From contig NW_026974141.1 of the NCBI RefSeq assembly GCF_037042905.1, positions 8,804,001 to 8,868,000 of the forward strand: 64,000 nucleotides of DNA. Reading direction: 5' to 3'. The DNA comes from Lytechinus pictus. Taxonomy: Eukaryota. The notes beneath the pieces were generated by a model that was given only the letters and a program-made list of their open reading frames with translations, was not told the DNA's origin and did not search any database. Shown piece by piece: positions 13,496 to 62,300 of the stretch. The position numbers were made by a program, and so were the translations under genes. Each line of letters opens with the position of its first letter. The first letter of the stretch is position 1.

Positions 13496-14574
13496 AGTGT
13501 TAATTGGGCAAAATGAATGAAAATAAAATGGATATTAGACCAACTGGTCATGAGACGAAATGGTCACAGGCGAACTGGTGATTAGACGAAGTGATGATTG
13601 GACCAAATGATTATTGGATCAAGTAGACAAAATGTTGATGGACGGAATGGCATTAAACTATGAAGGTACATGTAGATCATGTGGTGAAAAAAAAGTACCT
13701 CACCACTGTTTCTTTCAGCAGAAATCCTCTTGGGAGGCTTCATGAAAAATAGTGACAAAAATTGAAAATACATTGCACCTTTGACTTGTATTAATTTTTC
13801 CAGACCTTTCATCTTTGCTGTTCAATAACCTTTGAAAACTTTTGTGTTGGGTGTTGATTTTTTGCCTTTTTTCACTTATGTATCTTTCAAGTTTCTGTAT
13901 TACCTTGTGTGCATTTGTGAATTTTGTATCATCTTCCTTTATGCCCGAATTGTGATTTCTATGCATCGTCTTTCAAAATGTGGTGTGAAACAAGATTATT
14001 ATGCATGCTGAAAAGAAATTGATTTTGTTTAATCATTATGATGTTAGTGATCATTTTGGTTTATTTCAATCTTTCATAGTTTTTATCGTAGAATTCTTGT
14101 TATAATGATCACTGGCTTTGTTTTAATGGATTCCTTTCAATGAGAGTTTAAAACGATTTTGATTCATTTTCACTTTCATTTATTACATAGTATGTTATCT
14201 GTTTTGATCAATAGCAAGGCGTAAATAAATCAAAGCCTTCTGAGGCCATNNNNNNNNNNNNNNNNNNNNNNNNNNNNNNNNNNNNNNNNNNNNNNNNNNN
14301 NNNNNNNNNNNNNNNNNNNNNNNNNNNNNNNNNNNNNNNNNNNNNNNNNNNNNNNNNNNNNNNNNNNNNNNNNNNNNNNNNNNNNNNNNNNNNNNNNNNN
14401 NNNNNNNNNNNNNNNNNNNNNNNNNNNNNNNNNNNNNNNNNNNNNNNNNNNNNNNNNNNNNNACCAAATCAACTTTGTAGAGTGCTCAAGGCGCATAAAG
14501 AGCTAAAGAGTTTTTAGAAGATTTTTGAAAGTCTCGACAGAGGTACATTTTTTCATTACTTTTATTCCTTCCAG

Positions 14575-14766
14575 TCTCCAGCCAAGAAAGACGACAGCAG
14601 CTTCAACGACCTCTTCTTCCGTGATGGCACACGACGGATCGACTTCGTCCTGGCTTACAGGAAGATGGAGAGTGAGGAGAGGGAAGAGAAGAGAGTGAGA
14701 AAGAGGACAAACTACGAGGCCAATCTCGTTGATGAAGGCCTTGAGCTTGAGTACGAGAACTCAGAG
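14575..14766 (+). CDS. Anoctamin exon SPAKKDD...[14 protein letters not shown]...LELEYENSE (first exon found, phase 0/0)
   Basis: ttccag acceptor, gtaaag donor, 192 nt, N-terminal domain motif. Confidence 0.92.
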
Positions 14767-17700
14767 GTAAAGTCTAATCATTTTGAGTTTCATTCATTTC
14801 GAGTTTGATGGTGCGTTTGAGTGTGAGTGTGAATTGGATTCAACTAACTCAAATTTAATTTTGTCTCACATTTTTGTAAAGCATTATCTACAAAAACTTG
14901 ACTATTTAAAGATAGAATTCAGAGAACTCAGAGGTAAATACCCATCATTTCGAGTTTGATTCATTTCGAGTTTGACGGTGAGTTTGAGTGTGAATTGGAT
15001 TCAACTAACTCAAATTCAATTTTGTCTCACCTTTTTGTAAAAGCATTCTCTACAAAAACTTGAATATTTAAAGATAGAATTTAGCATGAATTCACTATTT
15101 AATGATAGAATTTTATAAAGTATAGAAGTTTTCATTCAAAACTTAATTGACTCTTCAAAATTCATTCTTTGAAGAGTGAACGTTTTCTTTGTTATCATCA
15201 AGAGAGTATATTTTGGAATGAACTTGGGAGTTGGGGAAGTGTACTTCTGAAGCAAAGTTTTAAAACAAGTTTCCTTTTTACAATTACAGTTTGGATTAAT
15301 CCAAATATTTAATATTTTTTTATTTGTCTGAAAAATCTCAACCATCTGTAATTACTTTTTGCAAGGAATTGAGATTGTATTTTCAAATAATTCAACTCAA
15401 GGTCACATTCCAAACTATTAAGTTTTCAGTGTTTGAATTCAATAAGGGAATGCCTCTCGATTTTTCTGTCCTATGTTTGTTTTCTTTACTTGTAATAATA
15501 ATAATAATGTTCATCATCTTATGGTGTACATGTGGAAAAATGAATACTATAATTATTGATATTTCATGTATTATTTATTATTAATTATAATTATACATGT
15601 AGTTAAAATATATTTATAAATTCCTTATTTTCTATAGAAAAAACCCAGAGATTCAATAATTCTTTAATATCATACTCTGAACTAAATTTAATTTATTACA
15701 GTTTAAGGTTCAGTCCTTCAATTTTCACCAGGAGGAACCATTTTGATATCATAGTAAATTTCTTATTGTGGCCTAGACAATTTCTTTTGAAAACTCATGT
15801 GTATTAAAATTAATTGATTTATTATCATTTAATGCAAAAGTTTGTTAGCCCCCCATTAGAAAAAAAAATTGTGACAGTATTGAATTTTAAGATACGATGA
15901 TATATATTTTCGTCCATGAAGATTGCAAGAATATTAAAGGAAAAAGAGCATGATTTTTATGATTCGTGATCAGCTAGTGTTCCCCTGAAGTTTTTTCTTT
16001 CAAGGGCAAACAAATTTCATACCAAAAAGCTGTCAATTGTCAAGTGTGGCTAAATAAACACACTTTAAAAATAATCATTAGGAAAACACCCACTGATGTG
16101 ACAATGGATCGACTTGATTAAAGTTTTGATATATACATGTACAATAGAAAGAATGATTCAAATTATGAATCCTTCGATCATACAGCACATGCATGCATGA
16201 ACACATTGCTTTATTAGATATTTTGCTTTGATTTTAATACCTTGCTTTTGAATTTGGACAATAAAGAATGACTACACTAGTTATAGCTCTTTATGTTGCA
16301 TTGATTATAGTTTGAAATCATTTTAGTCCGAGGTACGATGCATGTAGATAGTTGAATTAGATTACATCATCAAGAAGTGGATGCGATGAAGGTGTTTAAA
16401 TTTTTTTGTTTGGGGTTTCTTCTGCCCGATTACATGTGGTGCTTTTTCTTGAATTACCCCACATACCCTTCTTGTTGAGCATGGAGCCCCATAAATTCTC
16501 ATTCTCAATTTCACGAAAAGCTTTGTTTTCTATTCACTGATTTAGACATGTTTTACAATTCATTATGCCGAAGCCATAACAAATTATGTTTCGAGTTTCA
16601 TTTTTCTAATTTTTTATTTTTTTTTTCAATGATACAAGAGAAAAATCATGTTTTTTTTTTAAAGCTATGTATTTTCTTTAAATTCCACTCGATGCTTGAT
16701 CTTGATGATTGTTTGCTGTTCGTTTGCTCAATACTTCTATTATCTTATGTTTGAATAACCATTACATGTTTATTGCATGAGTGCTTTTTATATAAAACAA
16801 ATGAAACATAATTATTCATGTTTGATTCTTAACCTTTTTTTCTTGATCTCAACCTTTTTATCTTAATTTCTTTCTCATCTACTCCATTTCGGTCCATCTT
16901 TTTATTTCTCTATCACCGCATCTGGCACCCTTTCTCCTCTTCCAATGCTGTTACATGCACGACACTCTGACCCCACCCTTCCTATAAAAAATGACCTCCA
17001 TTAAAAATTCTTCCCTCAAACTCTTCCCCCACTCAATTCCCACAACTTCCCCATTCCAATATCTTCCCCCCCCCCCGCCACCCTCTTTGCTTGATTGGCG
17101 TTGCATTCTCAAAACGTAACCCGCACACACACACCGAACTGACAACCCGTGTGCTCTATTAACTTCCACGCCCCCTTTCTTTGATGTGTATTGGTTGTCG
17201 TGGTAACGTCGGCATGCAGGGGCCGGAGCCGAACCCAGAAGACCCAGTGAGTATAGTTGTATGGTGAAGTATATGGGTCACACACAAAAAAGAAAAGAAA
17301 CATACATGTACCAATCCCAGTCCAAATCGGCCCCACCCCCACTGTAACAAATACTCCTGTGGGTGAAGGTTTACTTTCAATATATTTTATAATTCATGAT
17401 TATTTGGAGTTAAAGGTTATTATGATTTGTGAAGGGGGTATATAGATGTATTCATTTGAGTTTTATATATTTTTGGTTATTTGGCAATAATGTGTACTAC
17501 ATGAACGTGTGTTCTATGCAAGCAGTATCAGGTGCATATTGGTATTGGAAATTAATAACCATCCCGATATTAAACCCCTAATCAGTAAGTGATAACAGAG
17601 TAAAAGCATATTTGGAGGAACAATAACAAACATTTTTTTTGGACCAAGTTATTCATTTTAAAATACTAAACTCTATTTAATTACAAAAAGTAAAAGCCCC

Positions 17701-20700
17701 TTTGCACAGCTCTGTGACAGTCATTCGAGGCAATAGATACATTTCTTGAAAAAAATCTGAACAATATTTTCTTGTTTTGAAAATGATATATTCAGTTGAC
17801 TTACACTAGTCTACAGTTTATGTTCTTGTTGAAATAAAATTTAATGCTTTCGTTGCAGAATAAAATCTCTTTTGATTGAAGCGAATTTCAGTTGCTTCTT
17901 TAATAACAAATTAAAAGCTTCAGTGCTAACGAGACATATATATCAACAGTTTGCTGCGTTTATTTCAGCTTAAAACTAACCCCTTTTATCTTGATGATAA
18001 ATACTAACAGCTTTGACTCACATTACATTTTTCTTTATAACAACAGGATTTTATTCATACAAATAACGAAAATGTTTTATTTTGCAGACATGACACAACC
18101 GTTCATATCTACATCATATGCATGTCATGATACATACTCATTAATACAGAATAGAAGTTTTGGGGTTTTTAAGAATCATTTGCAATGTTATGTATTATAC
18201 AATACAGTATCTCCAACAAGTTGTGTGCATATCTATATTTGATGTTTGTGTATTAAAGAGGATTTAAAAAGATTAGCATTTCCCTAAGCTTTATCAAATT
18301 TTTTCAGATACGTACAGAAACAAATGTGAACCTTATCATCTTGAAGCTGATAGAGAGACTTATGGATTCTTACTATTTTTCATTTTTTCTTAATATTGAA
18401 TTAATCCTATAAAGTTGAACGGGTAGAGGGGCAATAAATTCTCGATCTTCATATTTAAATCTCAATATGGGTGAGAGTGAGACGGCTTTAATATCATAAG
18501 TACCGGTATTTATTATTGCTCATTTCAAAAGAAATATTAATGTGAAGTTGGGAGTGGATTAAGGTTAATTAATGGCAAAGGGAATATATATATATAGACT
18601 CGGGATTTTAAAATACCTGTCCCTGTTTCTACATGTATGTACAGTGTATTGCATGCAAGAATGTTGTGCCGGAAACTTTGTAAAAATTCAAGTATAAACC
18701 CTTGTTATGATCCCTCTCTATTGGTGTACGTCCCTTTTCATATAAACTTTAAAGCATTTGCAGTGAATTGTTCGATAGATCTAAATTTACCTCTGGGATG
18801 CACGGAAGTAGTGACATTAAAGTACAATTATATCTTCATGTAGATTGATACTAGTTAGTTAAGAATTGTTTCCTAGGAGGCGCATCCTTTCCCTCGTGCA
18901 CTTTTCAGTGTATTCATGTAGCAGGCAGAAAGTGGGAAGGGAGAAGAGGGAATGTGTGGTACAAAGTAATTGCAAAAAAAAAACATAACCAGTGACAATG
19001 TTTTCTTTTTTTGGGGGGGGGGGGAGGGGCAAGGACTCCACTCAAGAGCAATCTATTAGAAAAAAAGAAAAGCTGATTTTATCATGAAAATCAAAGAAAA
19101 TGAGGAACCTACATTTAGTGTAAATTTTGTATTACTTTAAAATGTACACCAGCTTAATGAGTATTTGGACACGCCCTTTGATTAAAGATGAAGAAGGGGG
19201 GGGGGGACTTGTAATGACTTTTATATAGGTTGTGATACACATGGGGCAGGGTAGAGTATAATTCCTTTAACGTATGGTTGTAAAAAGTAAAGAAAAAAAA
19301 TTATCACTTAAGCAGGGTTTGATATCCTTATACATGTAACACAGGTTGTTAAAAAGAGGAAAAACATTTTTTTTCGGGGGGGGGGGGGGGTGGGATTAAC
19401 TTTATTGGTTATGGTATCGATGGGGCACTAATTATAGGCCCTGATTTCTATAAAATTAAGTAAACACCATTTATACTGGATGAACCGTTAGCTGATGGGA
19501 AGCTATGAAATCCAGTATTCGGTCTGAAAGGATTGTTTTTCATTTGTCTTGGGTTGGATTTTCTTCCGCAGGAATCCCACGACAACCGCACCTTCTTCGT
19601 GAAGGTCCACGCTCCATGGGACCTGATGACTCGCTATGCTGAGGAACTCAAGATCAAGATGCCCATCGAGGTATTTAGAAAAGACTTGCAAATAATTAAT
19701 GAATAACATGGAATTAATTTCTGGAATCCTCTCTTCCAGTTGAGGAAAAGGTCAGCACAATCACTCAAAAACAGAAAGTCTCTAAAATAATATTTTCAGA
19801 ATTATTTCGGTTAGGTAGGCTTGTTTGATAAAAGCACCCACTCATGAAGCATGAGTACATTTATGATGAACCATGTGATTCTTTTATTACTCCTTCAATT
19901 TCTTTTTCCATCTGTTCTTCAAAATAGTCACAATATATTGGTGATGGCACTTTGTTATAAAAAAAGGAACTATAATTTTTTTTGGTTTAATCGAATAAAG
20001 GGAACTGGAAAACTAAATACTTTAATAGCTCTATTTACATGTAGTATTAAAGGTCAAGTCCACCTCAGAAAAATGTTGATTTGAATAAAAAGAGAAAAAT
20101 TCAACAAGCACAATGCTGAAAATTTCATCAAAATCGGATGTAAAATAAGAAAGTTATGACATTTCAAAGTTTCGCTTATTTTTAACAAAATAGTTATATG
20201 AACGAGCCAGTTACATCCAAATGAGAGAGTCGATGATGTCACTCACTCACTATTTCTTTTGTTTTTTTATTGTTTGAATTATACAATATTTCAATTTTTA
20301 CGAATTTGATGATTAGGACCTCCTTGCCTGAAGCACAAAATGTTAAAATAATGGAATTCCACGTGTTCAGGGAGGAATGAAACTTCATTTCACATGACAA
20401 TGACGAGAAAATCAAAATATTTCATATTTCATATAATAAAATACAAAAGAAATAGTGAGTGAGTGATGTCATCAGTTCCCTCATTTGCATACCAGCCAGG
20501 ATGTGCATATTACTGATTTGTGAAATGAAGCGAAACTTTAAAATGTCATAACTTTCTTATTTTACATCCGATTTTGATGAAATTTTCAGTGTTTTGCTTG
20601 TTGAATTTTTCTCTTTTTATTCCAATCAAGTTTTTGTTGGGGTGGACTTGTCCTTTAATAATATTATCATTATTATTTTGTTAAATCAAATGAAAGGGAA

Positions 20701-26700: not shown

Positions 26701-29700
26701 TGTGTCCATGTGGCATATTCCCTTGAGTATGTCATTTGAATGTGATTGAGAATGCACCCCCTGCCTTCCCCCCCCCCTCCCCTACCCCATTCCCCTCCCC
26801 CATCCCCTTAGCAGCATTACAGATGGAAAGGAATGGCAAGGGTAGATTTGATTTATTTGGATGTATTAGATACCCCCCCCCCCCTCCCCTCGAATTCACC
26901 ATGACTGGTGTTTTTGGATCTTATTTTCTTCGGAGCAAAGACATCAAATTGTGTAGAATTAAAAATGCTATAAAATGACATTTGAGACAAGGGAATCGAA
27001 ATACGATATCTTCTTTTACAGCAACTGCATCTTTTCTATTTCCCTGAACATGCATACTCATACTAGGTAAAAGAAATAAAAGTTGTCAGTGTTAAACTGT
27101 TCAATTTTCCTCATGTATTCATCACAAATGCTCTACTTTTCCATTTGATGTAGAATGTTGTTTTGAATGTGTTGAATAATATCTATTTTGTGGCTCGAAT
27201 TCATACCTTCATTAAAAAAAAAAGCAAAATGAGCAGCTGCCAGTTTGGGCTCGACCCAATTTTAGAAATGTAAGTATTTGACCTTTATATGCATGCGGAC
27301 GGATTAATGCCAGTGGATCTACATGCTCATGGTTTAATACACGAACACTCTAAAAACTCAACTGACTCAACTACAATTATGATTTTCTTGTTAATAGTTT
27401 CATTTAACGACCATTCCCGACCTGCCACCCCAAAACCAACAATAAGTTGTCCAAAATGAATTATATGGCAAAAAGAAGCTGCTGAAAACTGCTTATCTAA
27501 TAAAAGAGAGCCAATGGAGTAAATTAGAAAGTCAAAAGGGGCCTAAGCTTTCGATCCTAGCAGAATCTTCGTCGGAGGCAAAAAAAAGAAAAGAAATGAA
27601 TTCTGATATTTTATCAAGCTTGAAAAAGCACACCGTCGTACTTTGATACAAAATTGATCAACGGCAATCCTCACAAGTATGTGATGGAGTGAAATTCAGT
27701 GAAAGTTTTGAAGAATATAAATAAGGTTTGAAATTTTGAGTTCACCCAAGCACAAGATGTGCATACTTTACAATCTCTGTCAAGCTTCTAAGAAGTCCAA
27801 AGTAAAGAATTTAAAGGAGCTTTTACATATAACTTTACAACTTTACAAATTTGGACATTTTTAAGGACAAGAATTATTCTTTCAAGTAGGCTAATTTTCA
27901 CTTTTGAAGACAAATTTACTGTGTTGGCCATTTTCAGAGACTCTTCGCTGGCGACTTATTGTTGGTTTTGAAGTCACGATTCACATTTATGTTCATACTT
28001 GATATTTTTTTTAAAGCTCTCTTCAGTTTATTTTGTGATTAGAATTGTAATAAGGCCATAGATCACTGGTTTTTGATAGCTAGTGTATTATGAAATGCCT
28101 ATCTAAATTTGGAGATTTTAAAAAACCATTTCATTACATTAAACACTCTGCCAGTCAAATAAACTTTATGGGTTGAGTGAATATCATATACAATAATATA
28201 AAAAGGAAACATATGAATGCCATTTTCTATGATAATGTGAACCTTGTGTGGTTTGTACATATCTTCATTTTTTCTATAAATTTGAAGAAAACAACACATT
28301 GGTCATTATACTACAATAAAGTTTACAGTCAGAACAAGTTCATCCAAACTTCAAATACAGCCGGAGAAATTTAACAAGTCGACCCGGTTGAAAGAGGACC
28401 CTTTGATAAATGGGATTATATCTTCCATATCATTTTATGATTTTATGATTTTCTTTTTTTTTCCCGCTTTGTAATCCAAACTATTGCATGCTATTAACAA
28501 AATATATCTGATAATACACAGAAAGGATTTTAATTAGGGACATTTGTTGGTGAAATATTCAGGTTTGATTTGGATATCTGTATTTAGAACATTTGGGTGT
28601 GTCATCGGCATAGAAATTAATTTGATTTTCAGAAAATTTATTTAATTTATGTTTAATTCATTACAGTGTAGGTTTCCCTCTAGGGCTGGATTTGGGTAAT
28701 TCCACACAAGAAAAATAGTCAAATGAATGCATAGTAAAAAAATATAGATAATGCTAGAATACTTAAATTCCTGGATTAAATCATAAATCCGAAATTGTGT
28801 CACGATATTCAGTATTTTCATAGTGCATGTTTTATTTTTGAAAACACCATTATTCTGTGAAAGGGACTCAATTTACTGTGTGTAAATAATAGAAAATGAC
28901 ATAAAAATCCTCTAAAAATCATTAAAAAAATGATATGTAATGTAGTACATATCCGCAATATTTATGTAATACATAGTTCTTAAACATACAGCTCAGATTG
29001 CACCACAGCGTATCTAGCAATCCAGAGCTTGACCTGGCCAAAAGGGTCGGGTGCTATGAACACATAATTTGACGTCACTCCCTATCTTATGTCCAGAAGT
29101 TGGCATCTCTACAGCATACATGTATATGGTTAATCATACATTGTATTAACTCATATGATAACAATCGTCTTCTCAACTACCATTATGAGATAAGAGAGTT
29201 TTGTGCATTTTTGGAAATTGCAAGCATAAATGCTCATATCATGGCTGAATAATCCTTTCTCTAATGGAAGCATTGTGAGTATGTTGTACAATGTCGGAAC
29301 ACCTTTCACAACTTAAGCATTCATCAACCATTCCTGTTCATTCAGGATGTGTAAGCACCATGCATTCAGCAACTCATTGATGATGAGCAACTATTAAAAT
29401 CTCTATTATGATTATGCTAGAACACACATTTCCCCTAAACACCAGCATNNNNNNNNNNNNNNNNNNNNNNNNNNNNNNNNNNNNNNNNNNNNNNNNNNNN
29501 NNNNNNNNNNNNNNNNNNNNNNNNNNNNNNNNNNNNNNNNNNNNNNNNNNNNNNNNNNNNNNNNNNNNNNNNNNNNNNNNNNNNNNNNNNNNNNNNNNNN
29601 NNNNNNNNNNNNNNNNNNNTAGTAGTAGTAGAAGTAGTGGTACTTAGTAGTAGAAGTGCATGTAATAGTGTCAGTAGTACATGTAGTACTAGCTAGTAGC

Positions 29701-38700: not shown

Positions 38701-41700
38701 CCGCTGCCACCAAAATGTGAACAGCCATACATGATGCTCATGAATATTCAATTTATTTGTGATATTCATCTTGTATCCCACCGCTGCCACCAAATGGTGG
38801 ACAACCAAACACGATACTCATGAATATTCATAGATTGTGATTTGTTATTTGTTATGTGCATTCATGGTTCATGCTCACGTTTTCTTGATCATGTCACCTT
38901 TGTTTCTTAACATACGCTGTTTGACCGCATGACGTGTGAATTGATTTATGGCGCCCTCAGCTCACCGAGCCTTACATGAAGTTCTCGAAAAAGTTCCCAA
39001 GATTCTCGGCATCGGTTGCATCCATTTTCTTCATGGTGAGACTTGACAAGAATTCAACAAGAATTCAACATGAAAAACAATAACAAAGAAACCCCCGAAA
39101 TGCCAAATGTAGTTGCTATCCCAATGCGATGATTGTATCATTGCATTACTAGATGGCATCATGTTCATATCATACATAACTTTTGTGCATGTATTTCTCC
39201 ATTGTTGTGCATCTGATAATTCTGTGTAGCTCCCAGAGCCGTACATGAAGTTCTACCGTCGCTTCCCACGCTTTATGACGTCCATCACTACAATTGCGTT
39301 TATGGTGAGAGATTACGAACCGGTGCTTCCCGACAGCACACGGCAAATCCTTCTACCTTACAAACCCTGTTTTATGTTCAGTTGTGTCGCCTGGAACCCT
39401 CAAAGTGTATCTTCTACTCAACTAACCTTTGCAAATGCTTGCATATTTCACCTTCATCTACTTTTATTCGAGTGACTCTGACACTACTTTGTTTGCATCT
39501 TATCTGATTGCTATAATCTAACATTGGATTGGGTTTTGACTTCAAGTGTATATATCACGTAACTTTCTATCTTGCAATCTCTTGTATGTACACGCATTTA
39601 ACACTTGCAAACAATAGATGGCTGACAGCATCTTTTCCAACTATTCTTGTCAATTTCTTCCCCTTTATTTACCTTTTTGTTTCTTCACTCACTTATAATT
39701 TTCTTTTTGACCTATCATGCATGTTTATTTATCCTGATTCTGCTATTTTTCCACTATTCTTTCCTCGTCCACAGTGAATTTGATGAATCAGTTTGATTTT
39801 GTTCAGTCCTCTATGTAAATTGGTCTGTTTTGGGATCAGTCACTTGGTGTCTTTTGCACTAATTTTTAATTTGATCTTTTTTATTCTTTCTCCCTTCTTT
39901 CCAAAATTCACTCACTATGTGACATTACACTCTGTCTCGTGTGGTTCTGTCAAAATCGTATTTGATCATTTATGTCTGATCATACTCCTTAACAATATTG
40001 ATAATTGTTAATCGGGGCCGGGACAAATGTAATTCTATATATATTTCATTCCCCCCTTGAACATTGCTAAACTGATACAAATAAAAATATCTTCTAACTG
40101 CATTTCTTGCTAATATTGAAATAAAATCTGTTGGTACGTCCTCCAATTATTAATTTTATGCCATTAAAAAAATAATTTATGTACATGTGTATATTGGAAA
40201 CTTATATGCAAATTCATAAAATTCAAAATCATTAAAAATCATTCTTACTAAAACGAAAATTGGGATTCATGTTATTACAATATTCACTCCGCATACACAT
40301 GCAAATATCCAAATTAAATAACTGCGTATAAACTGTATTTGGTAAATGAAATTGTACTCGATTAATTAAAATTGTATTATAAAACTCAAAATTGTGTTTT
40401 ATTTAATATCAAATTGGGATTTGTGTCATTCATTCATTCATTCATTCATCATGCATTGCGACTTCCATTAACACCCTCAATCTCAAATGTGTGTGATCCA
40501 TGCCATTGATAATGCACCTCACAAAAACCACCCATGCATGTGGCAACTAAAACTTTGGATTCTGGATGACCTTTGGCCCATGGATGACCCCACGGCGTGA
40601 CCTCTATTAACCCTTGTGCGACCTGGTCAACTAACCTTACACCCTGGTGCACGTGCATGATGATGGCTTCCCCATGAGTTCTGGTAACACCCACACAATT
40701 TTCTCTCTTTTTCTTTACACATCTGCTGGGTTTTTTCTTGGATAACAAACATGACCCCTTGGTGACCTCTAATCTGACCTCATCCTGACCCCTGACACTG
40801 TATGTAATTACGGTGTCCCTTAATCCTGCTAACATCCACACAATCTTTTCTTGTTAATTACATATCTGCTGGGTTTTTCCTGGATAAAAAACATAACCCC
40901 TCTCTTAACCTTCCATCTGACCTCTGTTTTGACCCTTGACCCCTGTAGAGAGAGGAGCCATTTGTTCCCCTGAGAGTGCGATTTCCCCGCATCATAGGGG
41001 GTCTAGCGATTATCCTATTCATGGTAGGGTGAAATAATTATGTTACTTAAAGCCATACAAGATACTAACTGCCCTTTCACACGGTAAAAAATCGTAATTT
41101 GAATGATGATTCCAGTGAAAAATGAGGTTAATGGCGAATTTTTAGCACGTGTGAAACCAAACTAGAATGGCGAACGTTAATCACAACCACGAATTCAAAT
41201 TCTATTCCAGATGTGAATTCCAGTTAAGTTTCACTCAAATTACGGTATGAAGTTTCCGTGTGAAAGGTCTGATGATTCGAAAGATGAATTGCAATCATCA
41301 TTACAATGATGATTCAAGATTCACGTGTGAAAAGGCCCCTAGAGACTGCCACACAGAAATTCTATTAGCGCTAACACAGCACGAACAGTATTAAGCTCAG
41401 TCACTTTTTTCGGATTGTAATTTCAAATGTTGATCAAAGATGTAAACAACGCATTGTTACATCAGCATTGCTATGACATTATTGTAACAGGGCTTCTATT
41501 AAAGCATTGTTAGCACTACCAACGTTTCTGTGTGGCCTCCACAGTTATATACACTGTACAGTGTGTCCCAGAAAAAAGGAAACCTGGATTCCCACATCTT
41601 TTTCTTCAAAGGCAAATTAATCCTGATATTTCATTCACATCATCATACAATTCAATTATTCCTCTACATTTTGATACCTAATTAATTGACAAACACTTCA

Positions 41701-44700
41701 CCCATTAATGAGCAATACAAGTTGAAATTTTAATGTCAAAATCAGGTTTTGCAGAAAAATTGGACAAGATTGGTTTGTGATACGACAACCGTGCTTATTC
41801 GCTGATTGGCTCATTAGCATTTCTTTTGTATTATTTATTAAGTTTCTATCACTGATCCCTAATGAATGATTTGATAAGCTGTTGGTCTCAAATTAAAGAT
41901 GAGACTCCACTCTTACCATAAGTATCAAATTCATAGTAAAAACATTTTTGATAATTGTGAAATATATCTCTGAAAACAGGTTTCCTTTTTTTGCGAGACG
42001 CATTGTATAGTGCCATTGTGTCCTCAACAAGGCTAGATGCACGTTTTGATTCATTTTGTGATTGATGTGATTGCCCAACTTGAACCTACAATAAGTCAGC
42101 CAACATGAATTTGTATTTTTGACATAGTTTGAAAAATCTTTTAATGATTAAAATAATTACAGAATTAATCAATTAAAACCCATACATATTCTTCTATCTT
42201 GTGTTTCTTCTTTCAGAGGAGATTGAAAAAAAAGTTAACCTTTCAGTTCGTAATTTTCAAAATTTTGATTTAAAAAAAAACTCAAATAACTATTTTGGCT
42301 TAATACAAAGCAACTTACTGGTTTATTGTTTGTTTGAAGTTGGGTAGGACATTGCATTACTGAATGGATTTAGAGATTTCAAGCTTGGTGTTGACCGAAT
42401 GGTGTTGGCCTAGTTTTTATTTCAGCACAGCACCAGACTTGAATTGGAAGCAGGTGTTGGTGTTTAGCTTCATGAATCAATGATGTGCACAGCACCAAAC
42501 TTGTTCGAAAGCTGGTCTTGGTGTTGAGCTACATGTACATGAATCAATAATGTGCATAGCACCAAACTAGAATTGGAATCTGGTTTTGGTGTTTATAGCA
42601 GCATGTATTATTAATGTGATATTATGTATCATATTTTGTTTAAACCTTTCATTAAATGCCAAATCAGGCACAAACACCAAACTTGAACTCACCCAGTATG
42701 AATATTATAAATTTAGCAATATTTGTGACCATTAATTTTCACATACACTCACATGTATTATGCGCTAAGAAATGGGACAAGTGCAAATTTTGAACTATCA
42801 AAACATCATTTTCTCACCTTTTTTTAATTTAAAGGTAACAGCTTTTTTTTTTTAAGTGGGCTTGATGACAATAATCTGTTGCAAATGAAAGGAATGAGAG
42901 AATATTAGAACAAAAGATTGGTGTATTATTTGCTTCTACATGTATTAAATCACTTTATTGTGTTCTATTGTTATTGAAAATGGGTAGGTGGTATTGATAT
43001 TAAAACTCTGAGGTGGATATTGCATTAATAGAATTTATATTTGAAATATGTTTTAACTAAATCCCTTAACATAATGATATAGCCAAATCTCGGGAGAATA
43101 TTGTTTCCATTAAAACATAGAAGAACAAATTCAAATATTATCCAAATTAGTTTAAAAATGAGAGTGTTATGAACATTTAACAAATCTGAATTATTGAATT
43201 GACAAGATAACTTCATATGGAATACTTGAAAAGTTCAACACCTGACAGTGTTTTTTCCATCATGTACAATTTCCAGATTCTTTTGTGAAATATATGTAGT
43301 TTCCACAGTCTTCAATTTTTAGGAAATGTCAATTAAAAAAAAATCACATAAATTAATGATAAAACTTATAACTCTCATTTTGCCATTCATTTGTGTAGAT
43401 AGCGCTTTTGACAAATTATCTTTTCTGTCCCCACTTTTCTTTGAAATTAATGTAAATTAGTGATCAGGTTCAGTGTTTTTGAAGATTTTGTGTGGACTAA
43501 ACATGAATATATTTGTGGTTTCTGATTATTTGCTGTACTGATCTTTGTATAATAATATACTATTACTATATCTCTTTTAATATAACTATATGTAAATCAC
43601 ATTCGTTCTCATAGACAGATTTTGTTTTCAAGTTTTCAATCTTGTATGGCTCTTTAACAGTTATTCAATATAGATGTACGTTGCTAATCTTCATTGTATA
43701 GAAGAGTATTATTGACTGTCTAATCAAATTGAATGAATCTTTATAGAGAGATTCCATCAACCATTTGCAAACATATACCTGGTGAATTTCTATTCAGAAG
43801 AATTTAAGCATGTATGGCATTTCAGAAAGTTCAAATCCTCTACAATAAAGCATTTTTCTTCAAGTACATGGACATATTAATTTGAAAGGGACATAAATAT
43901 ATCGCAAAAGAAGCCTCTGCATTCCCCCCCCCCAAGAAAAAAAAAAGACATTTAAACATATGCTTGTTCGAGTTTGTCAATAATGTAATGTACAAACTCT
44001 GTTCATAATTTTATTGATAGAGATCCCCCAAACCTTTTAAGCACCCCCCCAAAAAAAAACTCTTCAGCAATATCTACATTTCCATATGTACGGTATGCCA
44101 GTGTATATTATGTAGTGTGTATTGCATAACTATATACATGTACATACAGAAGCAGAAGCTTATTAGGTATTGGAAGTGCTAGGTGTTTGCGGATGGTTGA
44201 TGTCTTCTTTCCTCCCTGAATAAGTGTTCTCTATGGCCCGTATTCTGAAGTCGGGTTTAACTTTAACTCAGGTTTAAAGTTGTGGTTTAAGTATGGATAG
44301 CCAATTGTTACATAAATTAGTAACAGTAGAGATATCACATTTCAGCTCATTTGGCTTTCAAATCTTTCATAATTGTGTAGGAAGTATGAATAGATAATTG
44401 TCTACATCAATGATAAAGAGCAAAGTAAACATAAACATACAACTTAATAGAAATGTTGACACTTTTGGCTTCCCATAATTTTAGCAGAGTTAAACCATGG
44501 TCTAAGTTAAACCTGACTTTAGAATACGGGCCTATATGTGTATCTAGTTACTGGTGCATTCACCCCCCTGTTCATTTTCTTTGGGACGGGGGTGTTCCAT
44601 GCTTACCAATGGGCTGTTAAAACTCTTGTACAGTATCTCAAAATGTAAAGATTTTGAAGACAGCGTAGAAAATGTTTTATATTAGATTTATGATAAAAGC

Positions 44701-53300: not shown

Positions 53301-56300
53301 AAACTCACAAAAATGCTTCTTATTTGTTTACTGATTTTGATTTTTTTTTGTTCCATCTGAGAGCCTCATGAAGTTCACCAATTTCAATTTTGTTTCCTCA
53401 ATTATGTCACCAATATAATTCACTACAGTGTCAACTGGGCTAAATTAAAAAATTGTGTGAAAATTTGTTGCGAGATGCCGGATAAGCTCCACATCATTGA
53501 TGTGCTGGTTCAATAAGCTTGCGCGTTGCATATCATATTCGCGTCGTCAGTCGAGTGCAACACAAAGTCATACTTAAAACATTGTAAAACACTCCCCTAT
53601 GGTACATGTATGTTTCACAAAGAGCCAAGTTTGAATACTATTGGTCATTTTGCTCCCCTTCAGAGGATTTATCTTGTAATATTGACGGTTTTAAATGTTT
53701 TTTGTTTGTTTACAGGCACTCGTCATTGCTTTTACCTCTGAGTTCATCCCCCGTCAAGTTTATAAATATTACTACAGTGGCGAAGAAAACAGTCTTGTTG
53801 GCTACAACAATTGGTCATTTTGCTCCTCTTCAGAGGATTTATCTTGTAATATTGACGGTTTTAAATGCTTTTTTTTTTTTTTTACAGGCACTCGTCATTG
53901 CTTTTACCTCTGAGTTCATCCCCCGTCAAGTTTATAAATATTACTATGGTGGCAAAGAAAACAGTCTTGTTGGCTACAACAACTGGTCACTTTCCTATTT
54001 CCAGACCAAGGATTTCCAGGAAGATTCGAAGCCTTCTGATCCGTCTTACCCAAGGGTTGAACCAGATGACCCGAACTATGGTCTTAACGTCTCTATGTGC
54101 AGGTAAAAGATGAAGCTGACTCTACAAAAAAGATGAGTTTGGTATAAAGCATTGTCTTGAGAAGAATTTCTAGAAACAGAGTACTGGTAGTCCGTCTGAT
54201 CGATTCTAATGTTGAAAATCGCTTTAAAAAAAAAATTAAAAAAGAAGAAAAATACACTGTTAACCAAACTTATCTTTTAAGGTTTCTTCATTGAAATGAT
54301 GCCATGATATGAAGTAATAATTTTTTTGATAGGTGAAAGTTTGAACAATATCAGACAAACAATAAGAAAGTTATGAATTTTAACAGTTGTAAATATTGGT
54401 AATCATTATACTCATGGAGACTTTAAATTGGGCGCATAGCAGATGTCATAGTGATGTAAGGCAAGGACTCCTCGTCCATTGTACTCCAATACATAAAATG
54501 GCAAAAAAAATTCTTCAAAGGTTTTACTTTAAATAATATTTATCTTTAATGAGGATATAAAACAACATACTTCCATAGTTATATTTAGATAACTGCCCCA
54601 GGGGCCCCCTGATAATTAAGTACACGGGCTATGGGAAAGTTGTCCTTGCCCCTTGTCATAATCTACTCACCCTGTTGCCAATTTGAAATCGACATAGTCT
54701 AAGGGATCTTAAATTTAAAGCAGCGGTAACTTTCTTATTGCTCATCCGATTCCCTTCAGACCTTAACCATTTGGTTTTATTATTTAATTTTTCTCCTTTC
54801 CACACAACATTTTATGACCAAGGCTGGACTCACCTTTCATTCCTCATTTAAAGGGGAATCCAGCTTTGGCCATAAAATGTTGTGTTGGGAAGGAGTAAAA
54901 TAAATCAAACAAAATGGCGAAAGTCTGAAAGAAATCGGACAAGCAATAAGAAAGTTATACATGTAGCTGCTTTAAAATTGAGATCACTAATACTACGTAG
55001 ATTTCAAATTGGCAACTGGGTAAGTAAATTATGACAAAGGGCAAGGACAACTTTCCCATAGGCCATGTACTTTATTATCAGGGATTTGTGGTTTTCTCCC
55101 AAGTACCAATTCCCCTGGGGCAGTAATCTACATTTGTAAATATAACCCAGGTACATGTAGTATATTGTTTTATGTCCTCATGAAAGAAAAATATAATTTG
55201 AAATAAAACTTTTGGGAAAAATGACATTTTAGCCATAATATGTATTGGAGTACATGGTAGTCCTTGCCTTACATCACTAGGACATCCCATATGCGGCCAA
55301 TTTGAAGTCTCCATGGGGATAGTGATTACCAATATTTACAACTTTTAAAGATTCATAACTTTCTTGTTGTTTGTCCAATATTGTTCAAACTTTCACTTAT
55401 CAACTTGTCTGATTTTTCTTTTCCTTATAAAAACAAGTTTTTATTTGGGTTGGATTCCCCTTTAAGTGGAGTCGGTCATTTTCATTTTGATTTGGATTCT
55501 TTCAGATACCGTGGCTACTACGATGAGAATTACGAGGTTACTTTGGACTACTGGCTTATAATCGCGATCAAGCTGGCCTTCATCTTGCTCTATGAGGTAA
55601 GTATTGTACCCAAATATCAAATAGTAGCTTCCCATTTAATGTACCGTCACTGTGATAAAGAGACTGTTCGATTTCTTTTTAGAGAGGGTGATGCTGTGAG
55701 ATAATTTTGTTTTCCTTTTTTGTTTAAATCGCAAATAGAGCCATCAGGCTTGTACAGCACCTCAAAACTTGAAATTGATCTTGCAAGTGAAAGTAATTTC
55801 TCTTAATTCTTTGGTATTATTAGTCATAAGGGTACATAGGGTTTATTGTACAACAGGGCTCCATAACTGAAAGGGATGCTTCAGGCTGAAAATAATATGA
55901 TTTGAATAAATAAAGCAAAATCAGGCAAACAAAAGACTGAAAATTTGATCAAAATCGTACAAGGAATAACAAAGATATGGTATTTTAAAGATATATATAT
56001 GCATTATTCCAGTAAAATAATTCTAGGCATGTCGTCATGCCTACTCAATGAGCAATCTGATGATGTCATATCCCCACTTGTTCTTTTGTATTTTATTATA
56101 TGAAATTAGGTTTATTCAATTTTTTCCTCCGAGAATTGAAAATATTGGAACGACAACTGATTCAGTACATTTGATATTATTGCTGCAACTTATTTCATAA
56201 GAGGAGAGACATAACATTCACACATGTATAAAAAAATCAAACAAATATGATTTCATGTAATAAGATAAGAAAAGGAAAGTGGGGATTTGACATCATCAGC

Positions 56301-59300: not shown

Positions 59301-62300
59301 CGTGCTAAAGCCGGGGTAATAGTATGCAGCATTTAGGAACATTTGTGTTAAGCGCTATATAATTGTTGCATATTGTTATTATTATTTCACAATGCGTTAC
59401 CAAAATATGGTATAAAAAAATTCTGAAATGCAAAAACTGAATATTGATGATGTCACACTTTGGTTCTCCATACTAACCTTCGTTATTGCATGGAATTATT
59501 ATCAACTGTAAGATATTCAAATTCATTAACTATCCAGCTTACTAATTTTCATACCTATCAGATTATTATCATGAAATTTACAGACTTCTAATCCATTTTT
59601 TAATTAAAATGGAAAAAAGGGGAAAAAAATCAAGTTATATATAAAAGAGAAGACATTTCAAACTAGGATGCCATTAGCTGTGTCATGTCCTTTGTATTTA
59701 AAAGAATGAACAAATTTGCTATGATAGTCCAACATTTCTCATCTTATGTAAAAGAAAAGACATTTTGTTGCATTCCATTTTGTTGTATCATGAAATAGAA
59801 ATGTCAGTTGTTCTTTCTAGATCTTTTTTCTTGTTTTCCAATTTATTAAATCTCTTTCTCTTTCAATTAAAAATAAGTCTTTTGTGTGCCTTTCCCATTC
59901 AATGTTTGTTATGTTTCCCCTTTTATTACCTGTGTGCTCGCTCATTAACTTTTTGTGTTTTCTTTTCTCACTTTCATTGTCTCTCTTCCTACATGTATCT
60001 CTCTTTCACTCTGTTTCGACAGCTCTCACATTATTAAACTTTTGTTGTTGTTGATTTCTTTCACTTTTTGATCTACCTTTTTAATGTCTTTTCCCCCTAT
60101 TTCTTTCCCTTTTTAGCCTCCTGCTCCTGTCTTTTCTGTTCTCTTTTCTCAAATTTCTCTTAAAATTTGTCACCATCCCGATATATGTTTGTTCCTGTTA
60201 TCTATCTATCTACCTACCTACCTATCTCTTGCTCTCTCGCTCTACTTTTTTTTTTCTCTTTTACAGCTTGTACACACTCTTTCTTTTACTGTTCATGTGT
60301 ACTATGAACGAATGTTGTCAGTCTATTTCATTATTTATTTTATTCCCACCCCCTCTTCACCTTCTCTCTCTCTCTCTTTCTCTATATCTGCCTATCATTT
60401 CGATTCTGTCCTAGAGATTGTTCCCAGTACTCTCTTTCAGTGCTAAACTATACCTGTAACCTTTCTCTATTTTCCACTCTGTAAACTCCTCCTGAACGTA
60501 ACAGACCTCTTCTTTTGTCTATGTCAGCCTCTTTCATTATCTGTCTTGGTCCTACCTCTCCCTCTCTTTTTCTCTCGCTGTCTCTCTGTTTCCTCTTTGT
60601 ATCTTTACTTGCCTTATCATTTTGGTCCTGTCCTGGAGGACATACCCTCTCTCATTGTACCTATATCCTTTCTATATTTCCACTCTGTAAACTCCTCCCG
60701 AATGTGACACACCTCTTCTTTTCTCAGTCTCTTTCATTATTTGCCTTTCTCCTGCTTCTCCCTCTCTTCTTTCTCTCTCGCTGTCTCTCTGTTTCCTCTT
60801 TGTATCTTTACTTGCCTTATCATTTTGGTCCTGTCCTGGAGGACATACCCTCTCTCATTGTACCTATATCCTTTCTATATTTCCACTCTGTTAACTCCTC
60901 CCGAACGTGACACACCTCTTCTTTTCTCAGTCTCTTTCATTATTTGCCTTTCTTCTGCTTCTCCCTCTCTTCTTTCTCTCTCGCTGTCTCTCTGTTTCCT
61001 CTTTGTATCTATACCTGCCTTATCATTTTGGACCTGTCCTGGAGGACATGCATGTACCCTCTCTCAGTGTACCTATATCCTTTCTCTATTTTCACTCTGT
61101 AAACTCTTCCCGAATGTGACAAACCTCTTTTTTTGTCAGTCCCTTTCATTATATGCCTTGCTCCTGCTTCTCCCTCCCCTTTTGCTCTCTCTGTCTCTCT
61201 ATCTTTCTCTTCTAATCTTTACCTGCCTCTTACTTCGATTCTGTCCAAGAGATTGTACACGCTCTCATTCTGTGTGAATTCGTATAACCATAATATACCC
61301 TCTCTTCACCTTCTGTAGCATCTCGTCTTATTCATCAAGTTCTTTGTGGCCTACATCATTCCCGACATGCCCGATTTCGTCAAGAACCAGATCAAGCGCG
61401 AGAACTACCTAGCCCAGCAGGCCTTGCGCACGGCCTTGGTAGAGAACCGGGGCAAGAGCAAGAAGATGGTCCCGCCCGGCGGACCTGAAGACTCCTCCGG
61501 CGCTTCCGGCCCCGTCGAGCCCTAAACCGGCTTCCCGTCGCCACGACTACGCATCATCCATCAGCGATCTTCACTATCATCGCGTCTGCATCCACTCATT
61601 TCAAACCAGAGCATATCTTTCTAAATCCGACTTGCCTCGTACACGACAGTGGCCTCTGTGGAGCTATTCACTTCCTCATAGAACATATTTCGTACTGTAT
61701 TTTATATATAGCCCCCTCTATAGACCAAAACTGTCAGTAGTGATGGTTGTTCATATTTTTCTGTCATAGCTGTTTTCTGTCATTCTTGTATATATCAATA
61801 CCTGACTTTGTATTGTACCATATTCTGTATCATTTAAAAAAAGTGTTAAAGCTTTTACATATATATCATTTACTTTTATACTTTCCGTACCCTATTTCTT
61901 TGAATGCTGTGTCTCGATTCAGAATTAGAACAAGAATCCATGTTCAGTGTTATTTCTGTTCTCATTCTTCATAAGAAAGTTTGATTCTTGAAATATGCAT
62001 GTGACTTTCCTAACAGGGTTTCACCTTCTAAATCTTGTTATTAACAAGTGTTCTCGAATTGACGTTTCTACATTTAATTGATCAAAACATGTGTTATACT
62101 AGCATTTCATAAGAGGCTTGACTTTTGAATAATGGAAATATTGATATATGTTGTATCATGTAATTATGCTCTATGCACTTAAGAACGAAAGGAGAGAAAA
62201 ATCATCATCAGTTGCTGCTTCACCTATTTTGTCATGTGGTAATGTGTTTGCAATCATCTTTACCCCTATTTACCCCTTATTTCACTCTCACTTGGCATAA

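What the first reader, a model, noticed from the sequence alone, without database searches (positions are those of the whole stretch)
16782..17252. 27-nt microexon with a 436-nt AG-free upstream zone and a UGC motif
Seen: cag|GGG CCG GAG CCG AAC CCA GAA GAC CCA|gtgagt would insert GPEPNPEDP in frame between ..ENSE and ESHD.. in the cytosolic N-terminal domain. There is no AG from 16782 to 17217, the tract is C/T-rich, and GCATG/TGC sits immediately before the AG. Known: bilaterian neural microexons (3-27 nt) regulated by the Srrm2/3/4 eMIC domain are frame-preserving and carry UGC near the 3' splice site; GCAUG is the Rbfox motif. Inference: a neural or tissue-specific microexon that gene predictors would probably miss.
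Basis: partly seen in the sequence, partly recalled or inferred. Interest (0 to 1): 0.72.

Follow-up and report, generated by a model that had tools for sequence, protein, structure and literature searches.

The report
Real, already annotated anoctamin microexon
The 27-base exon in this sea-urchin anoctamin (TMEM16) gene is real, is spliced into most transcripts sampled and is shared by other echinoderms. It is already in public gene annotation, so the only fresh point is the unusually long AG-free stretch of intron in front of it.

Summary
There is a 27-nt exon at 17220-17246, flanked by cag| and |gtgagt. It is in frame and adds GPEPNPEDP. The 436 nt upstream (16782-17217) contain no AG, against 10 expected; 1 of 200,000 shuffles matched this. 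GCAUG and UGC abut the 3' splice site.

RNA reads from three stranded runs and one transcript contig show both junctions, 14766->17220 and 17246->19572. The exon's read depth is about equal to that of its neighbour exons, so it is mostly included in these samples. No skipping junction was listed.

The gene is RefSeq 'anoctamin-4-like' of Lytechinus pictus, and the exon is already annotated: at least 8 isoforms carry it and 3 lack it. So the claim that predictors would miss it is wrong.

Orthologous cassette microexons, with and without the insert in RefSeq isoforms, sit at the same intron position in other urchins, starfish, a brittle star, a sea cucumber and crinoids. A scallop has a cassette there too, and an abalone has an 11-aa insert in some isoforms.

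S. purpuratus keeps a 396-nt AG-free zone, although the middle of that zone has diverged. A second copy in this genome keeps 443 nt. The other 26 acceptors of the gene have 18-125 nt.

My reading is a default-included cassette exon with a weak 3' splice site and a distant-branch-point type of architecture. Neural specificity is untested and looks unlikely to be strict. The scan has noted similar AG-free zones elsewhere in this genome.

The parts
14575..14766 (+). Upstream constitutive exon (...LELEYENSE), donor GT at 14767
   Evidence: RefSeq proteins map to it exactly. RNA contig and reads cover it.
16774..16779 (+). UGCAUG at the 5' edge of the AG-free zone; the last AG upstream is at 16780-16781
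   Evidence: The block TATTGCATGA is conserved in S. purpuratus, where UGCAUG lies at -420.
16782..17217 (+). 436-nt AG exclusion zone, 67% pyrimidine
   Evidence: S. purpuratus has 396 nt. A second copy in this genome has 443 nt.
16827..16867 (+). Cluster of branch-point-like motifs: UCUUAAC (A at 16832, -388), UCUUGAU (-374), UCUUAAU (-354). These are the candidate distant branch points.
   Evidence: The cluster overlaps the alignment window of locally raised identity to S. purpuratus that starts at 16810 (0.75; the windows starting at 16830 and 16850 score 0.57 and 0.47, against about 0.45 around).
16834..16935 (+). Strong U/C-rich tract directly downstream of the distal branch-point candidates (about 80% pyrimidine)
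17157..17163 (+). UAUUAAC, the candidate proximal branch point (A at 17162, -58), followed by a C/U tract at 17164-17182
   Evidence: It is conserved in S. purpuratus at -70.
17212..17219 (+). GCAUG and UGC abutting the 3' splice-site AG (17218-17219). The last 22 nt before the AG are only 50% pyrimidine, tied with acceptor 27225 for the lowest value in the gene.
   Evidence: S. purpuratus has UGCAUGCAG.
17220..17246 (+). 27-nt cassette microexon encoding GPEPNPEDP (residues 182-190 of XP_063970934.1)
   Evidence: Junction reads and a transcript contig. Exact RefSeq mapping. Isoforms with and without it.
17247..17281 (+). Strong donor GUGAGU plus an intron block that is nearly identical in S. 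purpuratus
19572..19670 (+). Downstream constitutive exon ([16 protein letters not shown]...), AG-free distance 39 nt

Best explanation
This is a conserved, already annotated cassette microexon of the echinoderm anoctamin-4-like (TMEM16) gene. It inserts nine acidic, proline-rich residues into a surface loop of the N-terminal cytosolic Anoct_dimer domain, between a helix (...[12 protein letters not shown]) and the strand FFVKVHAPW.

Shown: it is spliced with exactly the predicted junctions and is the major form in the RNA sampled. Skipped forms exist in RefSeq models.

Inferred mechanism: the exon has a weak 3' splice site, with no pyrimidine tract in the last 40 nt, and a strong donor. Its branch point and polypyrimidine tract are displaced upstream. 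One candidate is the conserved UAUUAAC at -58. The other is a cluster of UCUUAAC-type motifs with an 80% pyrimidine tract at -350 to -390, at the 5' end of the AG-free zone. The first AG downstream of a branch point is normally taken as the acceptor, so selection has removed every AG over 436 nt. The interval, together with the GCAUG/UGC at the acceptor, is the likely platform on which regulators decide between inclusion (the default) and skipping.
For: RNA evidence:
- Junction 14766->17220 was seen in 1, 3 and 4 reads of X8, X9 and X10. Junction 17246->19572 was seen in 5, 3 and 3 reads.
- Both junctions are GT..AG, and the strand of the reads fits a + strand mRNA.
- An X1 transcript contig of 1635 nt carries 29 letters between 14764 and 19572, which equals 2 + 27.
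- Depth over the microexon is about equal to that of the flanking exons.

Annotation and conservation of the exon:
- RefSeq L. pictus proteins map exactly onto the window with these junctions. The exon is present in at least 8 isoforms and absent in 3.
- Other echinoderms have cassette microexons at the same position, with and without the insert: S. purpuratus GPEPKEDDP, Diadema PPEPKDDDP, Anneissia ERATPT + NPDDP, Antedon EREDET, Acanthaster PRHDLD, Patiria PSQD, Asterias TL + IEED, plus Amphiura and Apostichopus.

AG-free zone:
- 0 AG against 10 expected, with GA at 10.
- S. purpuratus has 396 nt, with 124 mismatches and 68 gap columns inside the zone.
- When the diverged bases are shuffled among the mismatch columns, zero AG results in only 2-3% of trials per species.
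- The second genomic copy keeps 443 nt.
- The other 26 acceptors of the gene have 18-125 nt.

Other points:
- Branch-point candidates and conserved blocks.
- Domain position and insertion relative to mouse TMEM16F.
- The link between a long AG-free zone, a distant branch point and alternative splicing is established in PMC1431707.
Against: No branch point was mapped. A conserved near-consensus UAUUAAC at -58/-70 could be the only branch point used, and in that case the upstream 380 AG-free nt need another explanation.

No skipping reads were seen here. Two low-support joints were not displayed. Alternative use therefore rests on RefSeq models.

Starfish and crinoid orthologues have AG-free zones of only 40-123 nt. 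The very long zone is thus an urchin feature and is not required for the exon.

The shuffle test on diverged bases is only moderately significant (2-3% per species).

The function of the nine residues is unknown.
Confidence: 0.6

Rival explanations
1. This is an eMIC (Srrm2/3/4)-dependent neural microexon. Inclusion would be switched on in neurons through the UGC next to the acceptor, and skipping would be the default elsewhere.
For: The exon is 27 nt and frame-preserving. UGC lies at -5 (S. purpuratus also has one at -9). The donor GUGAGU is strong, the proximal 3' splice site is weak, and the AG-free zone is long. These are the features published for eMIC-dependent exons and for the 'long BP-AG distance, strong 5'ss' core architecture.
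Against: The exon is included at about the level of its neighbour exons in all three raw-read RNA runs, and it is present in the X1 transcript contig. It is present in most RefSeq isoforms and in the S. purpuratus cDNA entries named '122 kDa protein TMEM16', which I recall as a sperm protein. Only one UGC lies in the last 60 nt in L. pictus. Neither tissue of origin nor Srrm dependence was tested. A Pfam SRRM_C scan of the genome was blank, but so were its controls, so it is uninformative.
Confidence: 0.12
2. This is a default-included exon that is repressed in particular cells by factors bound upstream. Rbfox would act on the GCAUG that overlaps the acceptor and on the UGCAUG at the far edge of the zone. 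PTB-type proteins would act on the C/U-rich zone. Skipping, not inclusion, would be the tissue-specific (possibly neural or muscle) state.
For: Inclusion is high in the sampled RNA. GCAUG lies at -8 in both urchins, with UGCAUG at -446/-420 in conserved blocks. None lies within 500 nt downstream. GCAUG lies at -15 and -99 in the starfish, and UGCAUG at -44 before the second crinoid microexon. Upstream Rbfox sites generally promote skipping, and distant-branch-point exons are classic PTB targets (established knowledge; PMC1431707; PTB is discussed for eMIC exons).
Against: The argument rests on motifs only. GCAUG occurs about 1.1 times per kb by chance. No tissue data and no binding data are available. 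This reading is compatible with the best explanation and refines it more than it competes with it.
Confidence: 0.2
3. The AG-free zone is a compositional or repeat by-product with no role in splicing. The exon would use only the proximal branch point at -58.
For: A conserved UAUUAAC with a C/U tract lies at -58/-70. Gooding et al. describe long AG-free zones that are due to repeats. The zone is C/U-rich. Starfish and crinoid orthologues manage with 40-123 nt.
Against: AG occurs 0 times against 10 expected, while GA occurs 10 times against 10 expected; 1 of 200,000 shuffles matched. The sequence is not a dispersed repeat: only one other copy exists in the 812-Mb genome, and that is the paralogous or allelic gene copy. 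The zone is kept in S. purpuratus despite sequence turnover. It ends exactly at a used acceptor and is an outlier among 27 acceptors.
Confidence: 0.15

Closest known systems
Distant-branch-point exons marked by AG exclusion zones (Gooding et al. 2006, PMC1431707), e.g. PTB exon 11 (AGEZ 381) and nPTB exon 10 (AGEZ 438, predicted branch point -389)
   Same: The AG-free zone is of the same size (436 nt). Branch-point-like motifs and a strong pyrimidine tract lie at its 5' end (-354 to -388). The exon is alternatively spliced. The zone is conserved in an orthologue.
   Different: This is an invertebrate deuterostome and the exon is only 27 nt. A good proximal branch-point consensus is also present at -58. 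No branch point has been mapped.
eMIC/Srrm3/4-dependent neural microexons (bioRxiv 10.1101/2021.02.24.432780; 10.1101/2024.09.17.613571)
   Same: Length of 27 nt or less, frame preservation, UGC next to the acceptor, a long AG-free zone, a CU-rich displaced pyrimidine tract, a strong donor, and deep conservation of the cassette.
   Different: The exon is mostly included in the RNA sampled and is present in cDNA entries of a sperm protein. Neural enrichment and Srrm dependence are untested. The AG-free zone is several times longer than the roughly 75-nt scale analysed for those exons.
Alternative segments of vertebrate TMEM16A/ANO1 (segments b, c = EAVK, d; from my own knowledge)
   Same: Small in-frame cassette exons modulate cytosolic parts of an anoctamin.
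   Different: The site is different: the helix-to-strand loop early in the Anoct_dimer domain. The paralogue is also different; the closest solved relative here is TMEM16F/ANO6. No functional data exist.

Membership tests
Microexon (3-27 nt, frame-preserving cassette) | Length of 27 nt or less and a multiple of 3 | tested here: met
   17220-17246 is 27 nt and encodes GPEPNPEDP in frame.
Microexon (3-27 nt, frame-preserving cassette) | Actually spliced into mRNA with both junctions | tested here: met
   the two junctions were seen in 8 and 11 reads over three runs, plus one transcript contig.
Microexon (3-27 nt, frame-preserving cassette) | Alternative: both the included and the skipped form exist | tested here: inconclusive
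   Skipped isoforms exist in RefSeq for L. pictus (X19, X21, X24), S. purpuratus and Diadema. No skipping junction was listed.
eMIC/Srrm3/4-dependent neural microexon | [quoted passage not shown] | tested here: met
   UGC lies at -5 in L. pictus and at -9 and -5 in S. purpuratus.
eMIC/Srrm3/4-dependent neural microexon | Long AG exclusion zone or long BP-AG distance, weak 3' splice site, strong 5' splice site | tested here: met
   The AG-free zone is 436 nt. The 22 nt before the acceptor AG (-4 to -25) are 50% pyrimidine, tied with acceptor 27225 for the lowest value in the gene. The donor is GUGAGU.
eMIC/Srrm3/4-dependent neural microexon | Neural-enriched inclusion | not testable with these tools
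   Run tissues are coded. High inclusion in all runs laid and presence in the S. purpuratus TMEM16 cDNA entries argue against strict neural restriction.
eMIC/Srrm3/4-dependent neural microexon | Inclusion depends on Srrm234 | not tested
   This needs a knock-down. The SRRM_C scan of the genome was uninformative because its controls were also blank.
Distant-branch-point exon (AGEZ class) | AG exclusion zone of 100-150 nt or more, beyond what composition explains | tested here: met
   436 nt; 0 AG against 10 expected; 1 of 200,000 shuffles.
Distant-branch-point exon (AGEZ class) | Branch-point consensus plus pyrimidine tract near the 5' end of the zone | tested here: met
   UCUUAAC at -388, UCUUGAU at -374 and UCUUAAU at -354, each followed by about 80% pyrimidine. 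The block is locally conserved.
Distant-branch-point exon (AGEZ class) | No good branch point in the conventional position | tested here: not met
   A conserved UAUUAAC lies at -58 (L. pictus) and -70 (S. purpuratus).
Distant-branch-point exon (AGEZ class) | Zone conserved in orthologues | tested here: met
   S. purpuratus has 396 nt and the second L. pictus copy 443 nt. Starfish and crinoid have only 40-123 nt.
Distant-branch-point exon (AGEZ class) | Branch point mapped experimentally | not testable with these tools
   This needs lariat RT-PCR or lariat reads.
Anoctamin/TMEM16 | Anoct_dimer and Anoctamin Pfam domains | tested here: met
   PF16178 covers residues 131-361 (E 3.6e-76) and PF04547 covers 364-938 (E 6.6e-155) of P0154. 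The microexon is residues 182-190.

The most novel reading that the evidence does not exclude
The 436-nt AG-free zone marks genuine use of branch points about 350-390 nt upstream of a 27-nt exon. It would be one instance of a widespread sea-urchin habit of controlling regulated exons through very distant branch points. The same gene has an 839-nt AG gap before another alternative exon. The S. purpuratus orthologue has several gaps of 350-830 nt. The scan has noted other such zones in this genome. UGCAUG elements at both ends of the zone may act together to switch the exon off in particular cell types.
Probability: 0.3. Interest if true: 0.5.

Novelty: new member of a known kind. Interest (0 to 1): 0.3.

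Why it matters
The exon itself adds nothing to the catalogue, because it is already in RefSeq and in cDNA entries.

Three points may be useful:
- One loop of the N-terminal domain of this anoctamin carries alternatively spliced, mostly acidic microexons in all five echinoderm classes, and apparently in some molluscs. That marks the loop as a regulated surface of a channel/scramblase family whose N-terminal domain is poorly understood.
- The urchin version is a clean, conserved, testable example of an extreme AG exclusion zone in front of a microexon. It links two published architectures, distant-branch-point exons and eMIC-type microexons, in a species where embryos can be injected with minigenes and morpholinos.
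- It shows that a reader working from sequence alone can call a microexon correctly from splice signals and AG exclusion.

Tried and rejected
- Tissue specificity could not be addressed. The run identities are coded, and the single read-laying run is spent.
- A skipping junction 14766->19572 was not among the listed joints. Two low-support joints were not shown, so skipping is neither shown nor excluded.
- The Pfam SRRM_C (PF15230) search of the genome for the eMIC regulator found nothing, but its controls were also blank. It is uninformative.
- An RNA structure that might bring a distal branch point close to the acceptor was tested on 16800-17260. The z-score was -0.44, so there is no support.
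- Genomic loci of Diadema antillarum and D. setosum could not be fetched because the gene range exceeds 100 kb. Several isoform look-ups were not on record. Logan contigs of a further urchin were too short to reach the microexon.
- The dispersed-repeat explanation was rejected: only one other copy exists in the genome.
- The purely compositional explanation was rejected.
- A literature search for anoctamin microexons found nothing.
- The heavy read piles at 19001-19029 and 19376-19394 are poly-G runs that catch sequencing artefacts, not transcripts.
Full report
**1. Is the observation in the sequence?**

Yes. The window reads ...ggcatgcag|GGGCCGGAGCCGAACCCAGAAGACCCA|gtgagt. The AG is at 17218-17219, the 27-nt exon at 17220-17246 and the donor at 17247-17252. 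The upstream exon ends ...GAG AAC TCA GAG at 14766 (ENSE). The downstream exon begins GAA TCC CAC GAC at 19572 (ESHD).

The last AG before the acceptor is at 16780-16781, so 16782-17217 (436 nt) is free of AG. The zone is 35% T, 33% C, 23% A and 10% G. From that composition 10.0 AG are expected and none is seen. The mirror dinucleotide GA is seen 10 times against 10.0 expected. Only 1 of 200,000 shuffles had no AG.

Leaving aside gaps that contain N runs, this is the second-longest AG gap in the window. The other 26 acceptors of the same gene have AG-free distances of 18-125 nt, with a median near 46. GCAUG (17212-17216) and UGC (17215-17217) abut the AG.

**2. Is it an exon?**

Three stranded, ribo-depleted RNA runs of the same species label (X8-X10, raw reads) and one contig set (X1) were laid on 14480-19900.
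- Junction 14766->17220 was printed as 14764->17218 with 'cut +2' and GT..AG. It was seen in 1, 3 and 4 reads.
- Junction 17246->19572 (GT..AG) was seen in 5, 3 and 3 reads.
- All reads have the first mate on the minus strand, as expected for a + strand mRNA in a dUTP-type library.
- In X1 a 1635-nt contig (depth 321) aligns to 14574-14764 with its letters 1-191 and to 19572-19671 with its letters 221-320. The 29 letters between equal 2 + 27. Its loose end after 19671 reads the next exon ([10 protein letters not shown]). X1 is therefore spliced RNA that contains the microexon.

I converted bin depths to exon depths:

| Run | Microexon | Upstream exon | Downstream exon |
|---|---|---|---|
| X8 | 5.4 | 5.9 | 8.3 |
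| X9 | 4.3 | 5.0 | 9.4 |
| X10 | 6.8 | 6.1 | 4.4 |

The exon is therefore mostly included in these samples. A skipping junction 14766->19572 was not listed. Two weakly supported joints were not displayed, so low-level skipping is not excluded.

**3. What gene is it, and is the exon known?**

The flanking exon finds anoctamin fragments and full-length anoctamins. Using the Acanthaster protein as a bridge I retrieved RefSeq 'anoctamin-4-like' of Lytechinus pictus.

Isoforms X1 and X11 (XP_063970923.1, XP_063970934.1) map onto the window exon by exon. They match residue for residue in all but a few places, and the junctions are exactly 14766->17220 and 17246->19572. This also supports the earlier scan note that the genome is L. 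pictus.

The microexon is therefore already annotated. Among the members listed, it is present in X1, X5, X11, X15, X16, X18, X27 and X30, and in a second gene model, XP_063971237.1. It is absent in X19, X21 and X24.

Pfam places residues 131-361 in Anoct_dimer, and the microexon is residues 182-190. Against mouse TMEM16F/ANO6, the closest solved relative (E 8e-46), the segment [11 protein letters not shown] aligns to a gap between ...LQLEATRSV and [14 protein letters not shown]. By the alignment it is thus an extra piece of loop between a helix and a strand. That it lies on the surface and is disordered is my inference.

**4. Conservation of the exon**

| Group | Species | Insert(s), in isoforms with and without unless noted |
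|---|---|---|
| Echinoids | L. variegatus | GPEPNPEDP; only forms with the insert among those listed |
| Echinoids | S. purpuratus | GPEPKEDDP; absent in X5 and X10; present in NP_001073009 / Q1AP35 / Q1AP37 |
| Echinoids | Diadema antillarum | PPEPKDDDP |
| Crinoids | Anneissia | ERATPT (18 nt) and NPDDP (15 nt); all four combinations annotated |
| Crinoids | Antedon | EREDET |
| Asteroids | Acanthaster | PRHDLD |
| Asteroids | Patiria | PSQD |
| Asteroids | Asterias | TL (6 nt) and IEED (12 nt); all four combinations |
| Ophiuroid | Amphiura | A 12-aa insert, a 10-aa insert, or none |
| Holothuroid | Apostichopus | An 11-aa acidic insert |
| Mollusc | Pecten | KSSK |
| Mollusc | Haliotis cracherodii | An 11-aa insert in some isoforms |

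The S. purpuratus entries are named 'transmembrane protein 16' and '122 kDa protein TMEM16'. From memory these come from Galindo and Vacquier's 2005 work on sperm. TMEM16 has also been detected in Arbacia sperm flagella (PMC7024835), though I did not check whether that is this paralogue.

The hemichordate and amphioxus isoforms that I saw have no insert.

The sequence is conserved among echinoids, and its second half (NPEDP against NPDDP) is recognisable in a crinoid. Beyond that, only the position, the small size and the mostly acidic character are shared. I cannot tell whether the mollusc cases are homologous or convergent.

**5. Conservation of the AG-free zone**

In the S. purpuratus locus (L002) the 27-nt exon lies at 44206-44232. 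It is preceded by 396 AG-free nt, against 7.8 AG expected, with GA seen 7 times.

The alignment shows near identity over about 50 nt upstream (0.95) and about 35 nt downstream of the exon. Identity is raised but patchier (0.55-0.72) back to about 130 nt upstream. There is also a patch of raised identity at the 5' end of the zone (window starting at 16810). The middle of the zone has diverged: 124 mismatches and 68 gap columns over the whole zone.

When the diverged bases are shuffled among the mismatch columns, an AG-free result arises in only 2.9% (S. purpuratus) and 2.1% (L. pictus) of trials. This is moderate evidence that new AGs have been removed since the two lineages split.

The 601 nt around the exon occur only once more in the 812-Mb genome. 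That copy lies 1.46 Mb away on the opposite strand and is 95-98% identical. It has an identical microexon and a 443-nt AG-free zone. It may be a recent duplicate or an uncollapsed haplotype. Either way the zone is not a dispersed repeat.

In Patiria (L006:40118-40129) the zone is 123 nt. In Anneissia the zones are 40 and 121 nt. The extreme length is therefore an urchin trait.

**6. Mechanism**

The acceptor is poor. The 22 nt before the acceptor AG are 50% pyrimidine, tied with one other acceptor for the lowest value in the gene, and they are G/U-rich. The donor GUGAGU is strong.

Two sets of branch-point candidates exist:
- A conserved UAUUAAC at -58 (L. pictus) / -70 (S. purpuratus), followed by CCACGCCCCCUUUCUUU.
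- A cluster at the 5' end of the zone: UCUUAAC at -388, UCUUGAU at -374 and UCUUAAU at -354. Each is followed by about 80% pyrimidine. S. purpuratus has equivalents at -388 and -312.

The acceptor is normally the first AG downstream of the branch point, so an AG-free interval reaching back to -436 is what use of the distal sites predicts. This is the architecture defined by Gooding et al. 2006 (PMC1431707). Their nPTB example has an AG-free zone of 438 nt and a predicted branch point at -389. That class is enriched in alternative exons, and regulatory elements often sit within the interval.

Long AG-free zones, UGC near the acceptor and CU-rich tracts are also the published signature of eMIC-dependent microexons.

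GCAUG occurs at -8 in both urchins, and as UGCAUG at the 5' edge of the zone (-446/-420). None occurs within 500 nt downstream. By the usual position rule for Rbfox (my own knowledge), upstream sites favour skipping.

No stable RNA structure spans the zone (z = -0.44).

I therefore favour a default-included cassette whose skipping is the regulated event, with the displaced or distant branch-point region as the regulatory platform. Which branch point is used, and which factors act, is inference.

**7. Comparison with what is known, and novelty**

The exon is already known to databases. As a kind of element it belongs with cassette microexons and with distant-branch-point (AGEZ) exons.

I found no paper describing an anoctamin microexon at this site, nor its distribution across echinoderms. 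The scan has noted other long AG-free zones in this genome, including an 839-nt AG gap before another alternative exon of the same gene. The S. purpuratus orthologue has several AG gaps of 350-830 nt. The feature may therefore be common in urchins.

**8. Verdict**

- Observation: confirmed.
- Interpretation: partly supported. The microexon is real and in frame, and its cis features are of the eMIC type. It was not missed by annotation. Neural specificity is untested and, in its strict form, unlikely.
- Interest: modest. This is a correct call of an already annotated exon, plus a neat, conserved example of a known splice-site architecture.

Noticed in passing
G000:C21:7359949-7360558 (minus strand; locus L008): A second copy of the microexon region lies 1.46 Mb away on the same contig. 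It is 95-98% identical, has an identical exon and a 443-nt AG-free zone, and probably belongs to the separate RefSeq model XP_063971237.1. It could be a recent inverted duplication or an uncollapsed haplotype. It carries a 14-nt insertion after the UAUUAAC motif at the same place as a 13-nt insertion in S. purpuratus. The window copy may therefore have lost these bases, but I did not compare the two inserted sequences.
   Followed up: partly
window 27225-27269: Another small cassette exon (45 nt, [12 protein letters not shown]...) of the same gene is present in RefSeq isoform X1 but not in X11. Its acceptor is preceded by an A-run and has a weak pyrimidine tract (50%).
   Followed up: no
window 38961-39304, 53698-54103 and 61319-63765: The gene has duplicated exon pairs or sets that look mutually exclusive: the TM3 region, a late extracellular-loop exon, and two alternative C-terminal exons. 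The first set is the subject of an earlier scan note.
   Followed up: no
L002 (S. purpuratus orthologue): AG gaps starting at 72937, 91734, 67049, 94377 and 66202: The S. purpuratus gene contains several further AG-free stretches of 346-831 nt. The starfish and crinoid orthologues have none above 220 nt. Very long AG-free zones may be a general sea-urchin feature.
   Followed up: no
L001:25489-25506 and 28672-28686 (Anneissia); Asterias isoforms: Crinoid and Asterias orthologues split the insert into two independently used microexons. In Asterias one of them appears to be only 6 nt (TL).
   Followed up: partly
window 19013-19029 and 19377-19394: Poly-G runs attract hundreds of RNA reads with poly-G loose ends and odd 'goes back' joints. 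These are sequencing artefacts, not transcription.
   Followed up: yes
window 16601-16650: A T-rich, low-complexity stretch collects 7-12x stranded read depth, with poly-T loose ends. The reads are probably mis-placed from elsewhere.
   Followed up: no
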